Below are positions 1 through 61,671 of a stretch of 64,000 nucleotides of DNA, in pieces (within the stretch, counting starts at the first letter, position 1; every line of letters begins with the position of its first letter). The translations under genes were made by a program, and so were the position numbers. Location: NCBI RefSeq assembly GCF_001194135.2, contig NC_068991.1, positions 40,461,423-40,525,422 on the forward strand, written 5' to 3'. The notes under the pieces are model-generated. The model was not told where the DNA came from. It saw only the letters and a list, made by a program, of their open reading frames with translations, and made no database searches. Origin of the DNA: Octopus bimaculoides (Eukaryota).

Positions 1-757
1 TTGAAAGAAAACACAACCAAATTTTGCTTCCTGCTTAAGTAAGAAAACTTTCATCAGCCACAGGGAAGTAGCTGATGAAAGCTTTTAGCCATATGTGGAA
101 TACCAAAAATCAGATGGAAATTACTACTGTATTTTGTATGTATTGGTTGTTTTAAATGTGTAATGGCTTCTCAAGTGGTCTAACAGAGAATCCAAGCCTT
201 AGAGGCACCAGAAGCTATTTGAGCAACCATCAGCTGGAGGCTATGTAGACTCTTCCAAATGTGTTCACTGAAAGTTTATACGTTATGCTATCTGAAGGGT
301 ATAATTTATGCCAGAAGAAGGAGAAAGTGGTAGCAGGGTGGTTAAAGGGTGAAAGAGTGAATCTAGAGAACTACTGACTTTGATAGAACCTAGGGATTAC
401 TTTCACTATGGAAATAGCAAACTCAATGAGTTTTGTATAGTTCTACTTCCACTAGATCTGAATCTATATTGAAACTCTGGGACAGTAGGGTAGTTTACGT
501 ATGACTGCAGCCAATTTAATAAAAGTTTGACAAATGTCTTACCAACACTTTACAAGTACAGACACATTATGAAACTTACAGTTAAACTTGGTACCTATTC
601 CTTATAGTGAAATTACTATTGCAATCCCATGGAACTGTTGAGCTATTCCATTCATTAACAACTGATATAGTTACAATATCAATCACTGCAACCCTTCCAT
701 GCTTAATGACTTGTGCTGTTACACCATCAGCTCCTAGTGGGGTTTCTTGTTAATTTG

Positions 758-962
758 TTTAGCTCTTTTGTTATTATATTTCTGTTAAAATATACTGCCT
801 TAGTTTCAGTTTAGTAAAATAGCTTTGTCATCATTAAATTGGTGTTTGGAACATGAATTAACATGAAATTTTGATGGAAGATTTTAATTTAGGCCACTTA
901 AAAACAGTTTGTATCATATAGAACCCGGGAAAGTCTTGGGTGGTTTATATCAAAGAAGTTAA
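758..962. mobile_element. Degenerate piggyBac-like MITE (same family as 13983-14115 and 35035-35249)
   Basis: Internal gaaattttgatggaagattttaattt is the reverse complement of aaattaaaaccttccat(c/g)aaaattt in the other two copies. The end resembles ...atcaaaagggttaa. Confidence 0.5.
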
Positions 963-1699
963 TGGTAATTTTGACTTCCTCTACACTAGATATTATCCAT
1001 TTCTTCAATAAAATTATGCTGTGATAGGTTTTCTATGACTTTCTCATTGATTGTAGATGGATTATGAAAAAGATTTGTGAAGTACACCATCTCTTCAGAA
1101 ACACCTTCAGTATCATTAAAATAAATCCATCTTTGGAGAGGAACAGAAGTTGATTGGCAAGGACCAAATATATATTCTAAATGTGCTCTAAAGGAGACCT
1201 AAACATGCTCTCCATTGTTTTGGTATCTTTTTTTCAAAGGCCAGATAAATACCTGATGTGCTCAACCAGATGTATTCTTCATTACACAGGAATAGAACGT
1301 ATTAAATTAGAATTGTGAGATGAACACCCTAACCACTAGGCCACAAGTCTTCACACATATATGCACACACACATATGCTTGTGTGTGTATATATTATCAT
1401 ATATATCTATCTTGTTTCAATCATTGGACTACAGTTGTGCTGGGACACCATCTTGAAGGATTTAGTGAAATAAATTGATCCTATTATGTTTTAAGTCTGG
1501 TACTTATTCTATCTGTGTTAGGAAGGACATTGAGCTATAGAAATCATGCCAAAGCAGACATTCGATGACAATGCAGCTCTTGGGCCCATCGAATATTGTC
1601 AAACCACCCAACCAACCCACTACTACATAGAACATAGACATTTAATGATGATGAAATAGCAAGCAGTACCATCTCCCTCATCTTATTCATCATGGAACC

Positions 1700-2200
1700 A
1701 AATCTACTGCTAACAGCTGCAGTGAAAGAATCCAAATGCCAATAATTTATTGTGGTACCTGCCAACCACTAATGAAAGGTTCTATGGATGACCTAATCAT
1801 ATCAATATTACAGTCTATGCAAATTTTGAAGACAATTGGTGATATGACAGCATGAGCCAAAATGAAGTTGAAGCCAAGGAATTCAAGAAATTTGAAAGTG
1901 ACTTGCAAGATTTTACTTTCATGTTCTGGGAGATGTCCTATCATCAACTGAGGAAAATAATAGAAAATGCCTAGATAAGTAGTATGATGCTTTTTCTATT
2001 AATAGAAATAGTGCATCCAGGTCAGAGAGCCAATTAGATGAATGGTTGAGGAAGATAAAGGGATTAGACTTAGTAGGAGAGTTCAAAGCCTGGCTCTTCC
2101 AGAATGGGCTACTACCGAGACTTTTATGGCTACTGACAATCTTATGAAAGATTTATAACACGTTGAAGAGACATAGAAAAAGGTGAGTAAACAAACATCT
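1700..2200 (+). mobile_element. Decayed non-LTR retrotransposon RT fragment, HERO-like (R2/NeSL group)
   Basis: Hand translation gives QPLMKGSMDDLII...*AKMKLKPRNSRNL and WLRKIKGLDLVGEFKAWLFQNGLLPRLLWLLT. These resemble the FMDDL...WARMxFKPxKSRSL and GKFKAWxxQHGxLPRxLW signatures as I recall them. Contains stops. Confidence 0.65.
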
Positions 2201-3229
2201 CCATACTGCACTTGGAATTAATAGCTTTTAGCTATTTATAGTGTATTCAAACTGAGACGTGGGTATGCTGCTGAAATCTAATTTGCATAACTGTACTATA
2301 CAGCCTTTTGATATAATTTATACATACACTTCTGTTTACATTAACAATCAATTTTAGTGTCACTGAAAAATTAACAAAGTTATCACACCACATATATTAT
2401 CTGTCTGAATAGAGAAAGAGGGATCGATTTGGCTAATTTCTTGGAAGTTTAGACCTTCATCAGACCATCATCTTCAGTCCATGGAGGAATTACTAGTTCA
2501 TAATTGTTTATAGAGTATGTTGACTGGATACTCAGTTGAAGATGAATGGCACAAAAATTAATGTATTATGGAACCAAATTACAGGGTTAAATATTTACCA
2601 TATATATATGTAGAGAGAGAGCTTGGGAAGCATACAGAAATTGTATATATCTAATTTCATCATGAATGGGAAATAATATTCGTTTTCTATTTAATAATTA
2701 ATAAGTACAGTTACAGTTTGTGTACTTGCACTACTTATCTAGGTAGTACATCCCTGATATGCATAATACATCAAAAACCACATTGTTATATTTTAAACAC
2801 ACATGCAAACAAATCTATAAGAAAACTTATTTCATACATAGAGTTAATAATAAATATTGCAATTAATACTGAGCATTTATACTGTCATTACTCTGTTTAC
2901 TCTGTCATTACTACTTTCTGATATTTACATGTATGTATGTTTGTATATCTTGTTTCAGTCATTGGACTGTGGCCATGCTGGGGTACCACTTTGGCAGGTT
3001 TAGTCAAGCAAACTGACCCCTGTACTAATTTTTTTTTAAAGTCTGGTACTTATTCTATCAGTATCTTTTGCCAAATTGCTAAGTTACAAGGACATAAATC
3101 AACACTGGTTATTAAGCTGTGGTGGGAACAAAATTTGCTTAGTAAGTGCAAACTCAGGTCCAAATTCTTTTACAAACAAGGCTGATTTTTTTTCAATCTT
3201 AATATCAAAACAAACATAGGTAAGATATT

Positions 3230-6200
3230 TTATTATCATATATGGAAAAATAATGCTTCAAATCATTTAAAAGAATTTTCTATGCTCGCTCGTTTTGGTA
3301 ATGAAGTTTTCCAAGAGAATGTCCAAAGTGTTTTCCTTGCTCAAGTTCTTATATATGTACACTACAGCACAGTGTATCAGACGGTGTTGTGTCTTTGTGG
3401 TACGGAGTCAGGTCTTCAAACAGCAAAAGTGTGCTGAACGTTCTCATCACACAAAGGCTTGTCCATAGCGCTTTCTGAAGAATTGTACATTGGTGAACAA
3501 AATTCAATGCATTAGTGACCAGGGTAAATGTAAATCTAACTTCTTGGAGGACAAGGTCCAAAGAGTGGTTTCTGCGGTGTACAAAATATGTGCCAGGAAA
3601 CCTATGTCTGTGTGCATCCTTGAATGGCTGACTGGTCTGATATTGTTAGGAGATGTCTTTTTGTTTAATGTTTCAGTTGTGGTTCCTTTGATATTTTTGA
3701 TTACTTTAGACAGGCAGTTGAACATCTGAGGACCCCCAAACATCAGACTCATACAATAAAGTGATTTTGAAGGTGGTATATTTGGAAGCTGACAGTATCT
3801 AACAGTTCATGCATTAAAATTCTTTCTAATTCTGAAGTTTGGAACAGGATTTTCCATACATATGTGATAGTGTATCTCTCTCTCTTCAGCATTCAAGAGA
3901 GTAGAGACAACGCTTTCAAATATTTCCAGTAGTTAAGGCTTTTAACCAAAGGTATTTTACTGGTGAATATTCTTTGTAACTTTTCAGTTTCTTCTATGAG
4001 ACCAGATGTGTTAGGAGTTCAAAGTTGTGAGCAGTAATCTAACCTGTTCAGAACTCAGGTTTTCCATAAAGTTAGCCTTAACTACTGGTTCTCTTGTCAC
4101 AATGGTTTGTAGAATCCATCCTACGAGGTGTCTGTATTTAGAAGTCAGTTTGGTGATGTGGCTAATGAAAGATGCATCATTTGACGTGATTACTTCTAAG
4201 TCCCATATGTCATTAGCACTGAATCATTCTGGCATCAAATATTGTGATTTGTGTGTATTCCCTCTGTAATGAAGAACCTGAAATTTTGATGTATTAAATT
4301 TCATATTGTTTTAATCCACCCATTGATAAATGATGTTCAGCTCATTTTGAAATGTGACAGTATCTTCTTGAGTTTGGATGGTCATTGATGTTTTTGCATC
4401 ATCAGCATAACTCATTAGTTTGGATGAGTGCACTTCTGATAGGTCGATGATAAATAATAATAGTCCTAGAATGATTCCTTGAGGCATACTTCTGCATGCA
4501 ATATGTCTGGGGTCGGGTGTATCTCACTTAGTGCTATACATATTGTCTTTTCTTGCTGTGCAAGGTCTCTAAGATATGATAGCTTTGTTTGATTTGTGAA
4601 GTGTGAAAGACCTTGTATATTTGACATTATTATTGAATTGAGATTCTGGGTTAATGACTACAATGGTGTGGTTGTGCACTGGGGTAATAGCAGTGGTTGG
4701 TGATGTGTGAGACCTATAGGTTTTTTTTAAATTTCTTTTGCCAGAGTCATCTCTAAAAGAGAATTTTCTTGTTTTAGGAGGGGTTGTTGTCCGGAGTTGG
4801 TATGGTTACACTGTTGAATATGGTTATAGTTATACTGTTTGCAGTTATTGATTTTATTATTGTACTCAGTAGATATTTATGTGACTTGTGGGTTTCGATG
4901 AAAGTCTGTACCAACACTGCCTCTGTAAGGGATGTTTTTACTGGTTCAACGAGTCCCTGGAAGATGAGTGAAGGGACAGTCACACATCAGATATAATCTT
5001 TTATGTTGGGAATAACAACAGATTTTAAGATTCCAGGTTACATGTGTAGAAGTTAAGTGTAATTTAGCACGTAGTGGCAATGGTGATGTTATTGTAAGAT
5101 GTGTGGTTTCGCATTGGCTGGTATTGCTTGTACGAATTGTGCATCTCGTTCCAGGTGAATGAGTGAAGTTACAATCACTGTGTATGCATAGTCTCTCGCA
5201 TTGAGAATAGCAGCATATTTTGAGGTTACATGAGCTCATAAATTTTATTTCATTTACAGTTGACAGATTTATTATGGAGTTGTCAAGTATACATTCAGAC
5301 TGAGGTGAACAGTGGGGGAAGAAAGGAATGATCCTTTGCTAATTGGAGTCGTGGTAATGGTAATACAGTAGATTAGGATGATGATGATGGATTCTGAGAA
5401 GAATTTGAGAGGCTTGACTGTGGAGAAGAGCTTGGGACTGTGTTGTTAATAGGCCATCAATTGTTCTAGTACTGAAGACTGACTTCCAATGCTGATCTTG
5501 TTGCTATTGTTCAGTTGTGGTATTCCAAGAAGACAAGGAAGTAGATAGCTCTTAATTGTGGAGTTTAATAGTTCATCAATTTTTCTAATAGTGAAGAGTG
5601 ACTTCTAATGCTGATCTTGTTGTTGCTATTGTTTAGTTGTGGTATGGTTAGGAGCAGTAGAACATGATGACAAAGGTGATGATGGGTCACTTGTGGTATT
5701 CCAAGGAAAGGAATAGCTGAACTGTGAAGGGCTTTTGATTATGAAGTTTAATATTTCATCAATTATGCTAGTATTGAGAGAGTGGCCATGGTTGTTGTTA
5801 CACACACACACACACACACACACATACATATATAAATGTAAGATCCAAGAATCCGTTGTAAATATAAAAAACACCTTTCAGGAACAATAAAGTTTTATTG
5901 AGGCAGAAGGTTGTGGATTTTTTTGTATCGAAGTATAATAAGCTGGAAAAAAAATTCTTTTTATATTTCACAGACAACCAGGGTTGCCGGGTATGCAAGA
6001 GTTAAGGAATAGAGTAGGTAAGATCTGGGCTACATATGTTTCATAGTGAGCAGAACCTCATATATCCAAGTGAGGTGTATAACACAGGCTACTCTTCAAG
6101 CCAAAGATATCTTGATTAATTGAAAGTTTACATTGTTGCAAGGAGGTACATGCTAACACATGGAAGATTCAATCAGAATTCTGACAGAATCTTCTGTTGG

Positions 6201-7884: not shown

Positions 7885-9176
7885 CAGGGTGTCCCAAAAT
7901 GAAGGCAACCAACTTTTTTTCAGTTTTGCCGAAGCAAAATATTGTTATATTTTGGGTCCAAGCATTGCAATGCTATGGTAAAGGAAACACAATTATGGCA
8001 CTACCACATTTATTCAATATGACCACCTCTGTTTCGAATCACAACCTTAAGTCTAGGTGCAAATGCTTCACATGCGGCACACAGCTGTTCTTGCAGATTC
8101 AAAACCCATTACTGGCACAGTTTTGCCTTCAGTACATCGAGTGAAGCATCAGGAGTGCTCAAGACCCTCATCTATGAAATGAACCAAACAGAAAAATCCA
8201 ATAAGATAAGACTGGAGCTTCTTGAAGGCCATACATCCTTGCCTGTGACCTGTGAATGACAATGTTTTTCTGAATCTAGTGTTGTGTCTGTCTGTCTGTA
8301 GAGCTGTGGGTTGGTGCCGTGTCCTGCTGGAGGCTCCAAGGTGCACTTTGAAAGTGTTCATTCGCTCATGGAAGCACTTCAGCTTCCAGAATGTTGCTAA
8401 TATATCGCTGGGTGTTAATTTTAATACCCAAGGACACAAACACAAGGGGAGACCTTCCAGTGGCGGTCACAGCCACCCAAACCATAACTGACTAGATTTC
8501 AACGTCAATTTATAAGTTTACCTTCAACGGAGCCTGATACACTCCAAAGTCGGTCATTCTGGTGGTTTACTCTCTGTTCAATGTCAAATTTCTTTTCATC
8601 AGTGAACACCAGGTTGGGCAACATGCCTTCAATCTGACACAGGATAAGATGACTTCTCTTCAGTCTCATGGCTTTATAAACTTGTGTGTACTTATGACAG
8701 CAGATCATCTTATAGAAATGGGTCCTGAGATTCTTCTTGAGCACTCAATACATCAATGTTCAGTTTATTTTGTTGAAGCAGCCAGTTTTCTGACAATGAT
8801 GAGGATTTCACCATGTCTTTTCTTTGGTACTTTTGATAGGCTGAAGGGTCCACACACTTTTTTTTCAGCCATGTCCAGGTCAATCAGTGGTGGAACTAGT
8901 CTCTTGGAATTTCTTGACAATTTTTCAGACTGTTGTTCAGTTAATTTTAAGTTTTTTTTTACTATAGCTGTATTACTTTCACCTCCTTTGTGGAAGGTTA
9001 TGATTGTATTTTGGTCTATAGCCATTATCTAATTTATAAATCTGAATTTATTTAGTCCGAAACAAAAAGAAGACACACTAAGCTTTTATAATTACGTATA
9101 ATTTTCAGATTTTATCACACTTATTGATAGTTATTAAAGCCCAAAACTTTGGTTGCCTTAATTTCAGGACACCCTG
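7885..9176 (-). mobile_element. Full-span decayed Tc1/mariner element, maT/DD37D-like
   Basis: TA-flanked imperfect TIRs CAGGGTGTCC(caaaatg/tgaaatt)AAGGCAACCAA. Transposase fragments VFTDEKKF, VMVWVAVTATGRSPLVF, LQQDTAPTH, VWPSRSSSLILLDF (last catalytic residue D-type) and VIRNRGGHIE*. Confidence 0.88.
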
Positions 9177-14977: not shown

Positions 14978-15615
14978 ATACATAATTTTGTGAACTATAC
15001 ACCAGTTTCAGTTGCAGAGAACAACATGCACTATTGCTGCCAAGTTTGTCTCTATCTGCTTCACATACCATCTGTGCATGCAATGCACAAATCCATATGT
15101 TGAGTTAATATTAGTGCACAATCATCATTTCATAAGCACACAAATAAATGTTTCCTATTGCAAAAAATCATTACATTCTCATTTACATGCACCTCATCCA
15201 ATTTATTCCATACTTACTACTTGGAATTCGATCCATGCTTTCATTAGTAATGATCAGTTTGTAAACTTTAATCTTTAGTGATAGTTGTTTTAAGCAACCA
15301 AATTATTAAGTTTTTATATTTATATTTTTTAATACAACCTTTAAGATTTGATATTTAATTTCAGTTCTACACAAAACACAAATCTTTATTCCATTTAATG
15401 TATTATCTAATAGCTCTTCAATCAACTATATACATAATCCAATGGTGAAAATAATAAGACAGCCTTTTCTACATTATGGTCAGTTAACTATATATCAATT
15501 CGTGACTGAGCAGTTCTAATGATAAACCAAAGTGGCGTGTTGTTGATACTGGTGTATTTTCATTTTTTTTATTTTTGTTTGTATTTTTTGTTTTTTTTTT
15601 TACTTTTCTTTTTAG

Positions 15616-15648
15616 GATGTGAAGGCATTGTATTGCCCCATGTTGCTA
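15616..15648 (+). CDS. Candidate 33-nt PMCA site-A cassette microexon (GCEGIVLPHVA)
   Basis: About 60-nt near-pure T tract and about 85-nt AG-free zone ending tttag|GATGT. Donor CTA|gtactg (moderate). Length is 3n and it is stop-free in phase 1. Confidence 0.5.
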
Positions 15649-16047
15649 GTACTGATAAACATTTCAGTTTATTACTTTTTATTTTTGTCAGTGTGTACAC
15701 ATTTATTTGTAAATATTTATATTGTTGATACAATTTGCAGAAAAATCTTGATGCTATTTGTTTACAAAACTTGTATAAAAAATATATAAATTGCCTTCCA
15801 TCCAAACAACTGCAACTGTAAACAGTATTTGATATGAGTAACGTTTACCAAGATTTTACTGCATTTTATGCACCAGAATTAATAAGAACAATTGTGTACA
15901 CACCATTCTCCATATTTTATTTATAATTTCTACATTTCTTTTTATAATCTACAGCAGCTTACTATTTTTTTCATGATTTTGTTGGTTAATCACTCTACAG
16001 CTTTACGTCTTAAGTTAATATCAATTTGTTCTTTCTGTTTTTATTAG

Positions 16048-16077
16048 TGCTTGCTAATGAGCCAGAGGGGAATATTG
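16048..16077 (+). CDS. Candidate 30-nt PMCA site-A cassette microexon (xLANEPEGNI)
   Basis: ttctttctgtttttattag|TGCTTG...AATATTG|gtatgt, a good acceptor with a strong donor. Length is 3n and it is stop-free in phase 1. Confidence 0.6.
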
Positions 16078-17982
16078 GTATGTGTATTTTGAATTTTTGT
16101 TTTTGGGCATGCTTGGGCCAGATTATGGTGTTTCTTTTCAAACTGAATCTACTATCTCTCACTCAATCCCTTTCTCTTGCTCTTCTCCTTCAATGCATAA
16201 TCTGATATCCTTGTTCTAAACTAAACAACTGTTATTGCCCTTTATCATTCATTAATCGTGTCCTGCACCCTGTTGCTTCCTGACCCATTCCTTGACTTCT
16301 GAGCTTCATTGCATGATACCACATTTATGTCCTCAAGTAATTCCGATATTAAGACACTGTGGCCAACACTAGCTATAACACACTACTTTGGTGGCAATGG
16401 TTTTCTGATGCTCACTTAGCTTCTATACAGGATAGTCCTAAAACCAATAGTTGTTGTTAAAGAACAATTTCAGATAATACTCCATTTTAACATCTCACTT
16501 TATTTTGTGTTCTTGCTTTCATTTCTTTATCTTCACTTTGTTTTTCTCTACCACCAGTTTTTCCTTACCTTCCTGTACTGATATAACCCTTCCTTTACAA
16601 GATACCCTTTTAAACAAAGACATTCTGGATTCTTAAACACTAATCCCGTCAACACTTCTCTTAGTTTGCAACTTCTGTTTTTTTTCCCACTTTTTTGTGT
16701 TCACCAAAAATTTTTAATATATTTTTGTTTTATTTGAGCATGAATTTACATTTGTATGTCATCATTTTTTATCTGTGAGTATTAAACACAAATTTCATTA
16801 TATACTAAACATTTTTCCTTTTTTTTTTTTTTTGTGGTCTAAGTTACTTTCTTTCCTCATTACAGTGTATATTTTTTTATTATTTTATGTTAAGACTTAT
16901 ATAATATTTTAAAATACATACTTTTTTATTGTATTCATAAACAACACACTAGGCAGCTTTTTTATTTTTACAAATCTAATCCCCAAAGGTTTAGCTTACT
17001 TAATTTAAAACCAGTGCCTTCTGTTTTAAATTTAGAAACATTTTTTTTTATTTTGTCCAAACATGTCAAATCAGATGTAAACATGATAATTTTTGGTTGG
17101 TTTTAGTTTTTCCATTGACAATTCTGTCGTATGGCTTTAGTTTTATGTGTATATGTATATTTTGTTTTGTTTTGTCGTATGTCTTTTATGTTCCTTTTTC
17201 AGCGTTTGTCCAAATGTACTTTCATTTTCCTGTTCTACAGGTATACTTCACTCCCCTCTCCCCCTTTTGTTGCGTTATTTGGAGGCTATTTTTAGGTAGG
17301 AAGCTGTGAAAGTGCAATGATATAAGCCTGGCTTGTTAGTCTAATTTCACTTGTTATTAATTCAGTGAAATCAATTTTGAGGAATGGTCTATATAAAAAC
17401 AATTTATCATGTTCTAGTTTTGGTGTCTATTCTTCTAAATCAAACTCAGTTGTTCAGGCTCTATCATAAAATTACAATTAAAATAGTTTGTTAATTCTAA
17501 AAGTACCCCCCACAAACACACAAAAAAAAATTCAGTTTTATACTTAGAAGAAAATCTAAGTAGATGCATAACAATTTTATACAAGTTACTTTTTTTAATT
17601 TTAATTTCCAAAAAAAGAAGTTTTTCTTTCAAGTTTAGATATCATAAATATACTAATTAGAAATAGAATATGACACTTACTCATAATTATTATAAGAATA
17701 ACACAAAAGTTTTCCTCCACTTTTATTCAATAGATTTGGAAAACTTTCTAATATTTCAGTAAACTTTGTTTAATGTTTTATAACATATTCTTTCAGCTCC
17801 ATTTGTGATTGCATTTTTTGCAAAGAAGTAAATATATCAGAAACTTTCAGTTTCTCCTATTTGTAAATAGTTTGTTGAAGCTTCATAATTTAGTATTTAA
17901 CTGAGGTGCTCTTAGCCTACTTGCACATATATGTGTTGCCATCTGTTTAATCATTGGTGGTATTTCACCATTTGAATTTCAG

Positions 17983-18060
17983 ATAATAATAAAGTGAATA
18001 CTGCGGACTCAGGAAAGAAAGCTTCCCATGTCTCTAAGGCATGGCTTAATAAATCAAGCT
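17983..18060 (+). CDS. Candidate 78-nt PMCA site-A cassette exon (xNNKVNTADSGKKASHVSKAWLNKSS)
   Basis: gaatttcag|ATAATA...TCAAGCT|gtaagc, with about a 65-nt AG-free zone upstream. 26 codons, open in phase 1, giving a hydrophilic Lys/Ser-rich peptide. Confidence 0.6.
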
Positions 18061-19668
18061 GTAAGCGATTTCTACTGTTTCAACATATTAAACTTGCTGA
18101 GCCCTATCTTTGTTGGCCTTCATCTTCTTTCTTACTGCTATTTCTAACTTCCTGGAAAGCACCTACTTTACCGTACTCTCAGTCCTCTGCCACAGACTTT
18201 GTGATTGTTATTGTGTAGCTTATTGATAATGTGGAATAATTTCTTCATTTCTCCTTGACTTGTTGTGCTTTCTCAGTTCAAATGTTGTTTTGTTCAATGT
18301 CTTAGTTTTTCTTTCAGTTACAATTTATTAGTTGCTTAGATCTTACCACTCAGAAGTATGTTACTTCTGAAATCTGCCCTAGTCAATTATCCTCTGCTCT
18401 TCCAAGGTCAGCTAAAATAGAAACTTCTGAATGTAGGTCTTGCTCTATAAACAGATCTAACTAAGCTTCAATGTTTGAAACAAATCCTTTTCAATCTGTT
18501 TACACATTTATGTCTGTGTTTATTCTAATGCCACCTAAATTGCAGCAATCCAGAACTATGAATAATACATGTGCTGTTTTATTTCAATGTGTTGACAACT
18601 TCTACACACATAGATATTTGCACGTTAGTATGCATGCATGCATACTATTAAACAAAAGAAATTAACTCAGTTTTTTGCATATATGCGCCCTGAATAAATT
18701 TTACACGCTTCATTATCATTTCTTTCTTTTTATTGCCCTTTTATAGAAAGTTATTGATAGTTTCTTAAATACAATAGGCTAAAAATAATATATACATATC
18801 TACTGTCATTTCAAATTAAAGTTACTCAGCATTTAATCTGCGTAGTTGTGAATAAAGATGTTTTTTTTTGTTTTTGTTTTTTTGAAACGAAATGAAAAAT
18901 ATTTGAACTAACAACTGCTGAAATCTTCAACCCTTGATTAATAGAAATTACATTGATTATCCTCTAAAGTATAAGGATAAAATGTCTAAGCTTCTTATTT
19001 GATGTTTCAGTTTTGATTTTGTTTTGTTTTTTACCCAATGAGCTCTGGTGAAACAATTATTATCACTGAGACCAATCTTCTGTTGGGACAACCCCCAAAG
19101 ACAGTATGTCTAATTATGGATTGGTTTTATTGATAGTTTTATGCTAGAAAAATTTTACCACAGATGATGGTACAGGCAGAGTAGTAACTTCAGTAGGATT
19201 TCAATTTGGGACTGTAAGTTTTTGAGTCCTCAGTGAATTATGTTCTACTCTAGCACCTAACCATTGAGTCACTTTCTGTCATTGTTTCCATCATGCAATT
19301 GTCAACTTTGAAACCTACCCTATACTTAATGGTACTGGAAAATCAGGCAGTTTTAAGAATAGCTTTTAAGAATTACAGATTAAATTTTGCTCATTTCAGT
19401 ATCATACAATGAGGAATGCAATGCTTTCTGAAGAAAATATTACTTATGCAGGAGACATTATTTAATAGAGAAATTATCTAAAATTCCATACATTTTCAAA
19501 AGTTTTAAATTAAATAGAAATTGTTCTCCAATAATATGTTTTTGCAATATTTAAGGATCTCTTTTCTTTTTAAATTCTATCTTGTATAAATCTTTGCCAT
19601 TATATTCTAAACATGTCTTTGCTTATTTCTCTGAGACTGTAGTTGCTTTTGTACATTGCTTTCAACAG

Positions 19669-31299: not shown

Positions 31300-61671
<30,372 letters not shown>

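What the first reader, a model, noticed from the sequence alone, without database searches (positions are those of the whole stretch)
15616..18060. Candidate array of in-frame cassette exons at PMCA splice site A
Seen: the first constitutive exon (31300) opens in phase 1 in the first cytosolic loop. Three segments 13-16 kb upstream (33 nt at 15616, 30 nt at 16048, 78 nt at 17983) each have AG/GT ends, 3n length and no stop in phase 1. Chained together they stay open: GCEGIVLPHVA-M-LANEPEGNI-D-NNKVNTADSGKKASHVSKAWLNKSS-Y-SDSVP. The 78-nt peptide has 5 Lys and a KKAS (PKA-type) motif. Established: vertebrate PMCA site A inserts in this loop lie next to the acidic-phospholipid-binding region and affect membrane targeting (PMCA2 w/x/z). 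Inference: a lineage-specific combinatorial insert system tuning the Ca2+ pump, with up to 8 combinations from these three alone. I cannot tell whether it is already annotated.
Basis: partly seen in the sequence, partly recalled or inferred. Interest (0 to 1): 0.85.

Follow-up and report, generated by a model that had tools for sequence, protein, structure and literature searches.

The report
PMCA site A alternative small exons
Two of the three proposed mini-exons (30 and 78 bases) really are spliced, in varying combinations, into the mRNA of a plasma-membrane calcium pump, in the same loop where vertebrate pumps are alternatively spliced; the 33-base one has no support, so this is an ordinary new example of a known kind of regulation.

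Summary
The formal criteria (AG/GT ends, 3n length, open frame) are not evidence on their own, because 976 segments in the same 31 kb meet them.

RNA contigs from public runs decide the matter:
- **30-nt segment (16048-16077):** a real exon. It is the dominant form and is joined directly to the exon at 31300.
- **78-nt segment (17983-18060):** a real cassette exon. It is seen as seg2-seg3-D in two species and as upstream exon-seg3-D, with seg2 skipped, in one run. Contig depth suggests roughly 0-45% inclusion depending on the run.
- **33-nt segment (15616-15648):** never seen spliced in 10 RNA runs. Its donor is weak (GTACTG), and it is no better conserved than its own flanks.

A further alternative piece, probably 36 nt, precedes seg2 in many runs. 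It lies 5' of the window.

Seg2 and seg3 sit in blocks of 211 and 270 nt with no substitution in a sister species. The intron between them differs by about 6%.

The inserts lie just N-terminal of [12 protein letters not shown], the position of vertebrate PMCA splice site A.

This is a new member of a known kind, and function is inferred only by analogy. Whether the exons are already annotated could not be checked.

The parts
16048..16077 (+). Seg2: a 30-nt in-frame exon encoding (V/L)LANEPEGNI. It is the default, high-depth exon at the site and can be skipped.
   Evidence: RNA contigs join it upstream to '...GGTGAAGAAGGAG' or to '...CCACCTGGACAAAATGTACCAT'. Downstream they join it to ATTCAGATTCAG (31300) or to seg3. 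Depths are 23-4467. It is skipped in the X30 contig U|seg3|D.
17983..18060 (+). Seg3: a 78-nt in-frame cassette exon encoding (D)NNKVNTADSGKKASHVSKAWLNKSS, with net charge about +3.
   Evidence: Contigs of 136-138 nt read seg2|seg3|D in X32 and X36 (organism A) and X34 (organism C). In X30 the contig reads U|seg3|D. The seg3 to 31300 junction is also seen in X30, X36 and X11.
31300..31528 (+). Exon D: the constitutive exon after the alternative region. It encodes (D/Y)SDSVPSN...[26 protein letters not shown], the segment before TM3.
   Evidence: The acceptor at 31300 and the donor at 31528 are used in every RNA run laid. It aligns to human PMCA2 residues 325-426 and PMCA1 residues 337-447.
15616..15648 (+). 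Seg1: the 33-nt candidate, not supported as an exon.
   Evidence: No spliced contig in 10 RNA runs. Only low-depth unspliced contigs cross it: X29 15299-16075 at depth 4.3, and X36 ending at 15637 at depth 2.5. The donor CTA|GTACTG matches the consensus at 4 of 9 positions. RNA runs hold either all or none of the words that include its flanks.
15965..16175 (.). Conserved block around seg2, comprising the exon plus 83 nt upstream and 98 nt downstream.
   Evidence: No substitution or indel in organism E (X40), against about 6.3% substitutions in 16201-17779. It contains a GCATG at 16107, 30 nt past the donor.
17903..18172 (.). Conserved block around seg3, comprising the exon plus 80 nt upstream and 112 nt downstream.
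   Evidence: No difference in organisms B, D or E. All 7 sampled 31-mers of 17975-18068 are present in runs of organisms A-E.
15605..15753 (.). Conserved block that contains seg1 plus 105 nt downstream. Its role is unknown.
   Evidence: No difference in organism E. No Rfam match. The fold is not unusual, z = -1.0.

Best explanation
The window holds part of a PMCA (plasma-membrane Ca2+-ATPase) gene. In the very long intron region before the exon that encodes the pre-TM3 segment (31300-31528), two small in-frame exons are used alternatively.

Seg2 (30 nt) has a pyrimidine-rich acceptor and a G|GTATGT donor. It is included by default.

Seg3 (78 nt) has a weaker acceptor tract and a GTAAGC donor. 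It is included in only a fraction of transcripts in some samples. It appears either after seg2 or, in one run, directly after the upstream exon with seg2 skipped.

A further piece of probably 36 nt, ending ...CNPPGQNVP, precedes seg2 in many samples. It is encoded 5' of the window.

The resulting pumps differ by inserts of about 10, 22, 26 or 48 residues in the cytosolic linker between TM2 and TM3, immediately N-terminal of the basic [16 protein letters not shown] segment. The junction codons also change: V or L before seg2, and D or Y at the start of exon D.

Shown here: exon usage, the combinations, reading-frame preservation, conservation of the exons with their flanks, and the position in the protein.

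Inferred by analogy with mammalian PMCA2 site A: that insert length and charge tune membrane targeting and/or acidic-lipid regulation, and that the conserved intronic flanks carry the splicing control.

The 33-nt segment is most likely not an exon.
For: - Junction-spanning RNA contigs in organisms A and C: U|seg2|D, seg0|seg2, seg2|seg3|D and U|seg3|D.
- Only seg2 and seg3 were found as partners of the 31300 acceptor in four runs.
- The rough seg3 share, from contig depth, varies between runs: 35 vs 80 in X30, 16 vs 33 in X36, 5 vs 162-190 in X11, and none in X29 at depth above 2000.
- All forms stay in frame.
- Zero substitutions in 211-nt and 270-nt blocks around seg2 and seg3 in organism E, against 6.3% in the intervening intron. 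P is about 2e-6 and 4e-8 at that rate.
- PMCA identity and site A position.
Against: - The evidence comes from assembled contigs (k-mer paths), not counted reads. Depth is a poor measure of abundance, and rare forms are dropped.
- Tissue labels are hidden, so tissue specificity is only suggested by differences between runs.
- U|seg3|D rests on one contig in one run.
- The phasing of seg0 with seg3 is indirect.
- The upstream exon and seg0 are outside the window, so their structure (cassette exon or alternative donor) is not known.
- No functional data.
- Conservation was tested only in close relatives (7% divergence or less). No seg2 or seg3 counterpart was found within 10 kb upstream of exon D in two more distant relatives, although in the window they lie 13-15 kb upstream.
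Confidence: 0.85

Rival explanations
1. One reading: all three segments, including the 33-nt seg1, are cassette exons used combinatorially in up to 8 forms. Seg1 would be restricted to a rare cell type or stage not sampled here.
For: - Seg1 has an excellent polypyrimidine tract (95% pyrimidine) and keeps the frame.
- It lies in a 149-nt stretch with no change in organism E.
- Its words, with flanks, are identical in organisms B, C, G and H.
Against: - No spliced contig in 10 RNA runs of two species, including one with seg2 depth above 4000.
- The partners of seg2, seg3 and D never include seg1.
- The donor is weak, GTACTG, 4 of 9.
- Conservation is not exon-specific. Only 0.44 substitutions would be expected in 33 nt at the local rate.
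- 976 chance candidates meet the same formal criteria.
Confidence: 0.1
2. The seg1 block (15605-15753) is conserved because it is intronic splicing-control sequence, or a decoy 3' splice site, for the seg2 region about 400 nt downstream. It is not coding.
For: - Conservation extends evenly over seg1 and 105 nt of non-coding flank.
- Regulated alternative exons typically have conserved intronic neighbourhoods, as seen around seg2 and seg3 here.
- There is a strong acceptor-like tract without a usable donor.
Against: - Nothing tests it directly.
- The block could simply be a locally slow-evolving stretch.
- Only one informative sister species.
- No known RNA family and no unusual structure.
Confidence: 0.35
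3. Seg2 is constitutive and only seg3 is alternative within the window. The U|seg3|D contig would be an assembly artefact or a rare mis-splice.
For: - Seg2 skipping is seen in only one run, X30.
- In all other runs seg3 follows seg2.
Against: - The X30 contig has depth 35 against 80 for U|seg2|D.
- It needs real 31-mers across the U|seg3 junction.
Confidence: 0.1
4. Seg3 inclusion is splicing noise without function.
For: - It is absent from some deep runs, X29 and X13.
- It has no detectable relatives in the protein database.
Against: - It is in frame.
- By contig depth it reaches about a third of transcripts in several runs, in two species.
- It is perfectly conserved with 80-112 nt flanks in four other organisms while the nearby intron diverges by 6%.
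Confidence: 0.05

Closest known systems
Mammalian PMCA2 (ATP2B2) splice site A: exons of 33, 60 and 42 bp giving variants w, x, y and z
   Same: Several small in-frame optional exons lie in the cytosolic loop between TM2 and TM3, next to the phospholipid-responsive region and just upstream of [12 protein letters not shown]. They are used in different combinations (PMC6256341; PMC5641333). The maximal insert here, about 48 aa, is close to the 45 aa of PMCA2w.
   Different: Exon sizes are 30 and 78 nt, plus probably 36 nt. No sequence resemblance of the inserts was looked for or seen. No form skipping everything (a z-like form) was found in four runs. Seg2 is the default exon. The effect on apical targeting is untested here. 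Common origin versus convergence is not resolved.
Bivalve PMCAs with long site A regions (Tridacna squamosa 36 aa; Crassostrea gigas 39 aa)
   Same: These are invertebrate PMCAs that carry extra residues at the site A position, interpreted as an apical-targeting element. For C. gigas, one gene is said to give multiple isoforms (PMC5641333, PMC6987452).
   Different: Those papers describe a single cDNA or gene model, not demonstrated cassette usage. Here alternative inclusion is shown directly by junction-spanning RNA contigs.
Neural microexon programmes (SRRM4/eMIC-dependent exons of 27-30 nt or less)
   Same: Seg2 is 30 nt, in frame, lies in a surface loop, and has highly conserved intronic flanks.
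   Different: Seg2 is the high-depth default form in all runs. No UGC motif lies within 60 nt upstream of its acceptor. Neural specificity cannot be assessed because tissue labels are hidden.

Membership tests
PMCA (P2B-type plasma-membrane Ca2+-ATPase) | P-type ATPase phosphorylation motif DKTGT and hinge motif [17 protein letters not shown] | tested here: met
   ORF 32455-32640 contains [18 protein letters not shown] 48372-48590 contains [21 protein letters not shown].
PMCA (P2B-type plasma-membrane Ca2+-ATPase) | Closest to PMCAs rather than to other Ca2+-ATPases over the pre-TM3/TM3/TM4 region | tested here: met
   Human PMCA2 scores E 2.2e-32 and PMCA1 E 2.4e-32. The next hit is the plant PMCA-type ACA8 at 5e-9. 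No SERCA or SPCA scored E 0.001 or better.
PMCA (P2B-type plasma-membrane Ca2+-ATPase) | C-terminal calmodulin-binding autoinhibitory tail | not tested
   The 3' end of the gene was not examined.
PMCA splice site A | Located in the first cytosolic loop (TM2-TM3), just N-terminal of the [22 protein letters not shown] segment | tested here: met
   Exon D ends in [22 protein letters not shown] and aligns to human PMCA2 and PMCA1. The cassettes join its 5' end.
PMCA splice site A | Small exons of 3n length, optionally included, preserving the frame | tested here: met
   Seg2 is 30 nt and seg3 is 78 nt. Both are seen included and skipped in RNA contigs, and all forms are open.
PMCA splice site A | Several combinations of the optional exons occur | tested here: met
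   U-2-D, U-3-D, seg0-2-(D or 3) and 2-3-D are seen. The phasing of seg0 with seg3 is indirect.
PMCA splice site A | Tissue- or cell-type-specific choice of variants | tested here: inconclusive
   Runs differ strongly. Seg3 is about a third of the depth in X30, X32 and X36, about 3% in X11, and absent in X29 and X13. Tissue labels are not available and contig depth is a poor measure.
PMCA splice site A | Insert changes membrane targeting and/or lipid regulation | not testable with these tools
   Needs expression of the isoforms in polarised cells and activity assays.
Neural microexons (SRRM4/eMIC-regulated) | UGC-containing enhancer close upstream of the 3' splice site | tested here: not met
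   No TGC within 60 nt upstream of seg2. For seg3 there is one at -46 only.

The most novel reading that the evidence does not exclude
A site-A-type array of small optional exons in the TM2-TM3 loop is an ancient (bilaterian) or convergently re-invented property of PMCA genes. In this animal the long form (seg0 + seg2 + seg3, about 48 residues) would act like the 45-residue PMCA2w insert. That is, it would serve as a length-dependent signal sending the pump to a specialised apical or sensory membrane. The basic, KKAS-bearing seg3 would add a phosphorylation or lipid-binding switch. A weaker add-on is that seg1 is a fourth, very rare exon.
Probability: 0.2. Interest if true: 0.55.

Novelty: new member of a known kind. 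Interest (0 to 1): 0.35.

Why it matters
PMCA site A splicing is a textbook case of a few inserted residues redirecting a Ca2+ pump. PMCA2w goes to apical membranes and to hair-cell stereocilia.

This work shows that an invertebrate pump gene uses two to three small in-frame exons at the same loop. The flanks are conserved and usage depends on the sample. That gives a concrete system for asking two questions:
- Is the length-dependent targeting rule general?
- Is the exon array ancestral or convergent?

It also corrects the exon map. The 30-nt exon is the default form, the 78-nt exon is the regulated cassette, and the 33-nt segment should not be annotated.

The finding is useful for annotation and for comparative physiology. 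A specialist would not find it surprising.

Tried and rejected
Junctions to 31300 were therefore read from loose ends.
2. I looked for annotated isoforms in the protein collections. Only single-ORF fragments of exon D from other species came back, with no spliced proteins. The seg3 ORF found nothing. Whether public gene models already contain these exons could therefore not be checked.
3. I looked for deeper conservation in loci L001 (78% aa identity in exon D) and L002 (44%). These carry exon D, but no seg1, seg2 or seg3 counterpart lies within the 10 kb upstream that could be fetched. In the window the cassettes lie 13-15 kb upstream, so this says little.
4. I searched the window for the upstream exon and for seg0. 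Both are absent, so they lie 5' of position 1.
5. I tested the idea that the conserved seg1 block is a non-coding RNA. There is no Rfam match and the fold is not unusual.
6. I looked for a word-sharing pattern that would betray spliced seg1. Runs hold all 3 words or none.
7. Literature searches for cephalopod or invertebrate site A splicing found only bivalve cDNA descriptions.
8. Rbfox-type GCATG motifs: one lies 30 nt downstream of seg2 and one lies inside seg3, but 28 occur in 31.6 kb. This is suggestive only.

Full report
**1. Observation**

The three segments and the downstream exon are in the sequence exactly as described.
- Seg1 15616-15648: 33 nt, ...ttttag|GATGTG...TTGCTA|gtactg.
- Seg2 16048-16077: 30 nt, ...tattag|TGCTTG...ATATTG|gtatgt.
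- Seg3 17983-18060: 78 nt, ...tttcag|ATAATA...CAAGCT|gtaagc.
- Exon D 31300-31528.

These formal properties are weak evidence. In window 1-31299, 976 segments of 24-90 nt have AG/GT ends, 3n length and no stop in that phase. Only seg2 combines a pyrimidine tract of at least 80% with a donor matching at least 6 of 9 consensus positions. The seg1 donor matches 4 of 9 and the seg3 donor 5 of 9.

**2. RNA evidence**

Public RNA runs of the same species (coded organism A) and of a close relative (organism C) contain exon D and seg3. Their contigs were laid on the window, and junctions were read from the parts that run off the exon ends.

Seg2:
- It is flanked on the 3' side by ATTCAGATTCAGTTCC, the start of exon D. 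This holds in X11, X12, X25, X29, X13, X5 and X30, at depths of 66-4467.
- On the 5' side it has two different partners. One is ...AACAAAGAAAAAGAAGAAAGGTGAAGAAGG(AG), called U here. The other is ...AGTGTAATCCACCTGGACAAAATGTACCAT, called seg0 here.
- Neither partner is in the window.

Seg3:
- It is bounded precisely at 17983 and 18060 in contigs of 136-138 nt.
- In X32 and X36 (organism A) and X34 (organism C) these read seg2|seg3|D.
- In X30 the contig reads U|seg3|D, so seg2 is skipped.

Exon D:
- In X29, X30, X36 and X11 the only partners found for the 31300 acceptor are the ends of seg2 and seg3. There is no U|D form and no other exon.

Contig depths, which are a rough measure, put seg3 at about a third of transcripts in X30, X32 and X36. 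It is somewhat higher in X34, about 3% in X11, and not assembled in X29 or X13.

In X11 one contig runs from intron position 17727 through seg3 and then straight into exon D. This is a partly processed molecule. The 13-kb downstream intron has gone while the upstream one is still present.

**3. Seg1**

No contig in 10 RNA runs (X29, X13, X5, X30, X11, X12, X25, X32, X36, X34) starts or ends at 15616 or 15648. Only low-depth unspliced contigs cross it. In a word search over seg1 plus flanks, RNA runs hold either all three sampled words or none. No run shows the partial pattern expected of a spliced-only form. Contigs drop rare variants, so this is absence of evidence. It holds even in a run where seg2 has depth above 4000.

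**4. Products**

U ends ...TKKKKKGEEG plus one base, G. All forms stay in frame.
- U-2-D: ...[22 protein letters not shown]...
- U-3-D: ...GEEG-DNNKVNTADSGKKASHVSKAWLNKSS-YSDSVPSN...
- seg0-2-D: ...CNPPGQNVP-LLANEPEGNI-DSDSVP...
- With seg3 after seg2: ...EGNI-DNNKV...KSS-YSDSVP...

The split codons change with the partner: V or L before seg2, and D or Y at the start of exon D.

Contigs with U have 902 nt before seg2. Contigs with seg0 have 938 nt in three runs from two studies. Both have the same 2486 nt after seg2. Seg0 is therefore most simply a 36-nt in-frame addition, either a cassette or an alternative donor. This is an inference from contig lengths.

The inserts between U and D are then about 10, 22, 26 and 48 residues.

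**5. Conservation**

A DNA run of organism A is identical to the window over 15450-18250. Organism E differs by 111 substitutions and 89 gap letters in 2656 nt. Narrow lays give the full list of differences.
- 15605-15753 (seg1 plus 105 nt downstream): none.
- 15754-15964: 6 substitutions and 5 indels.
- 15965-16175 (seg2 with its flanks): none.
- 16201-17779: about 99 substitutions, or 6.3%.
- 17780-17902: 3 substitutions and 2 indels.
- 17903-18172 (seg3 with its flanks): none.

At the mid-intron rate the chance of no substitution is about 2e-6 for the seg2 block and 4e-8 for the seg3 block. All sampled words of seg3 plus or minus 8 nt are also present in organisms B, C, D and E.

Both real exons thus sit in conserved islands that extend about 80-110 nt into the introns, as is usual for regulated alternative exons.

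The seg1 island is equally clean, but the signal is not exon-specific. Only 0.44 substitutions would be expected in 33 nt at the local rate. It has no Rfam match and no unusual fold. It may be splicing-control sequence or a decoy acceptor.

Deeper conservation could not be tested. Two more distant relatives carry exon D but show no seg2 or seg3 counterpart in the 10 kb upstream that could be fetched.

**6. Gene identity and position in the protein**

Downstream ORFs carry [15 protein letters not shown] and [21 protein letters not shown]. Exon D plus the next exon matches human PMCA2 residues 325-426 and PMCA1 residues 337-447 at E about 2e-32. The match includes KEKSVLQ(S/G)KLT(R/K)LA(I/V)QIG and TM3-TM4.

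The alternative exons therefore insert just N-terminal of that segment, in the loop between TM2 and TM3. In mammalian PMCA2 this is splice site A. Exons of 33, 60 and 42 bp are included there in various combinations, next to a phospholipid-responsive domain, and they affect targeting (PMC6256341). The variants are w = 45 aa, x = 14, y = 31 and z = 0. Inserts above 30 aa direct the pump apically (PMC5641333).

Bivalve PMCA cDNAs carry 36-39 extra residues at this place. I found no paper on site A splicing in a cephalopod or on demonstrated cassette use in another invertebrate. Organism names are coded here and I could not check it.

**7. Mechanism**

Shown:
- Seg2 is included by default and seg3 optionally. 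Seg2 can be skipped when seg3 is used.
- A third piece upstream is also optional.
- All forms are in frame.
- The exons and their intronic flanks are under constraint.

Inferred:
- Factors that differ between samples act on the conserved flanks to set seg3 and seg0 inclusion.
- The resulting change in length (10 to 48 residues) and charge (seg3: 5 Lys, 2 Asp) of the linker before the basic pre-TM3 segment alters membrane targeting and/or activation by acidic lipids, as in PMCA2. The KKAS in seg3 fits a loose PKA-type pattern, but nothing tests it.

**8. Verdict**

The 33-nt exon and the '8 combinations' are not supported. The role of seg2 as the default exon was missed, as was the existence of a further optional piece 5' of the window.

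This is a new member of a known kind. It is useful for annotation and for comparative work on pump targeting, but not surprising. Automated gene models may well contain these exons already, and I could not check.

The decisive test for seg1, and for true inclusion levels, is junction counting in the raw-read runs X58-X60.

Noticed in passing
5' of window position 1 (seen only in RNA contigs laid at 16048): A second upstream partner of seg2, ...AGTGTAATCCACCTGGACAAAATGTACCAT (peptide ...CNPPGQNVP), is the only form assembled in X13, X5, X32, X36 and X34. Contig lengths suggest a 36-nt in-frame piece between the upstream exon and seg2. The X13 contig has a further 63 nt (also 3n) upstream, which may be another optional piece or just a different contig start.
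   Followed up: partly
window 31308-31313: In organism C the RNA reads ATTCAGATCCTAGT where the window has ATTCAGATTCAGTTCCTAGT. This is a 6-nt in-frame difference (two residues, SV) at the very start of exon D, between species whose seg2 and seg3 are identical.
   Followed up: no
window 17727-18060 joined to 31300: The X11 contig keeps the intron upstream of seg3 but has already removed the 13-kb intron downstream. This is a splicing intermediate and hints at the order of intron removal around the cassette.
   Followed up: no
window 15560-15613 and 16812-16836: T-rich low-complexity tracts attract thousands of genomic contigs (depth 16,000-95,000 in DNA runs) and create spurious 'joints' between the two tracts. 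The first tract is also the polypyrimidine run that makes seg1 look like an exon.
   Followed up: partly
window 16107-16111 and 18039-18043: GCATG (Rbfox-type core) lies 30 nt downstream of the seg2 donor, inside the conserved block, and another lies inside seg3. With 28 GCATG in 31.6 kb this could be chance.
   Followed up: partly
window 31359-31443: In the deepest RNA run (X29), minor contigs with one letter missing run parallel to the main ones in exon D (depth 52 vs 2230, and 96 vs 1950). These are probably slippage or sequencing errors in A-rich runs.
   Followed up: no
window 36950-37210 (-) and 8505-9025 (-): ORFs inside introns resemble mariner/Tc1-type transposase fragments (for example ...[12 protein letters not shown]...), judged by eye. 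They are probably transposon remnants.
   Followed up: no
window 54610-54709: A run of 100 N, which is an assembly gap inside the gene.
   Followed up: yes
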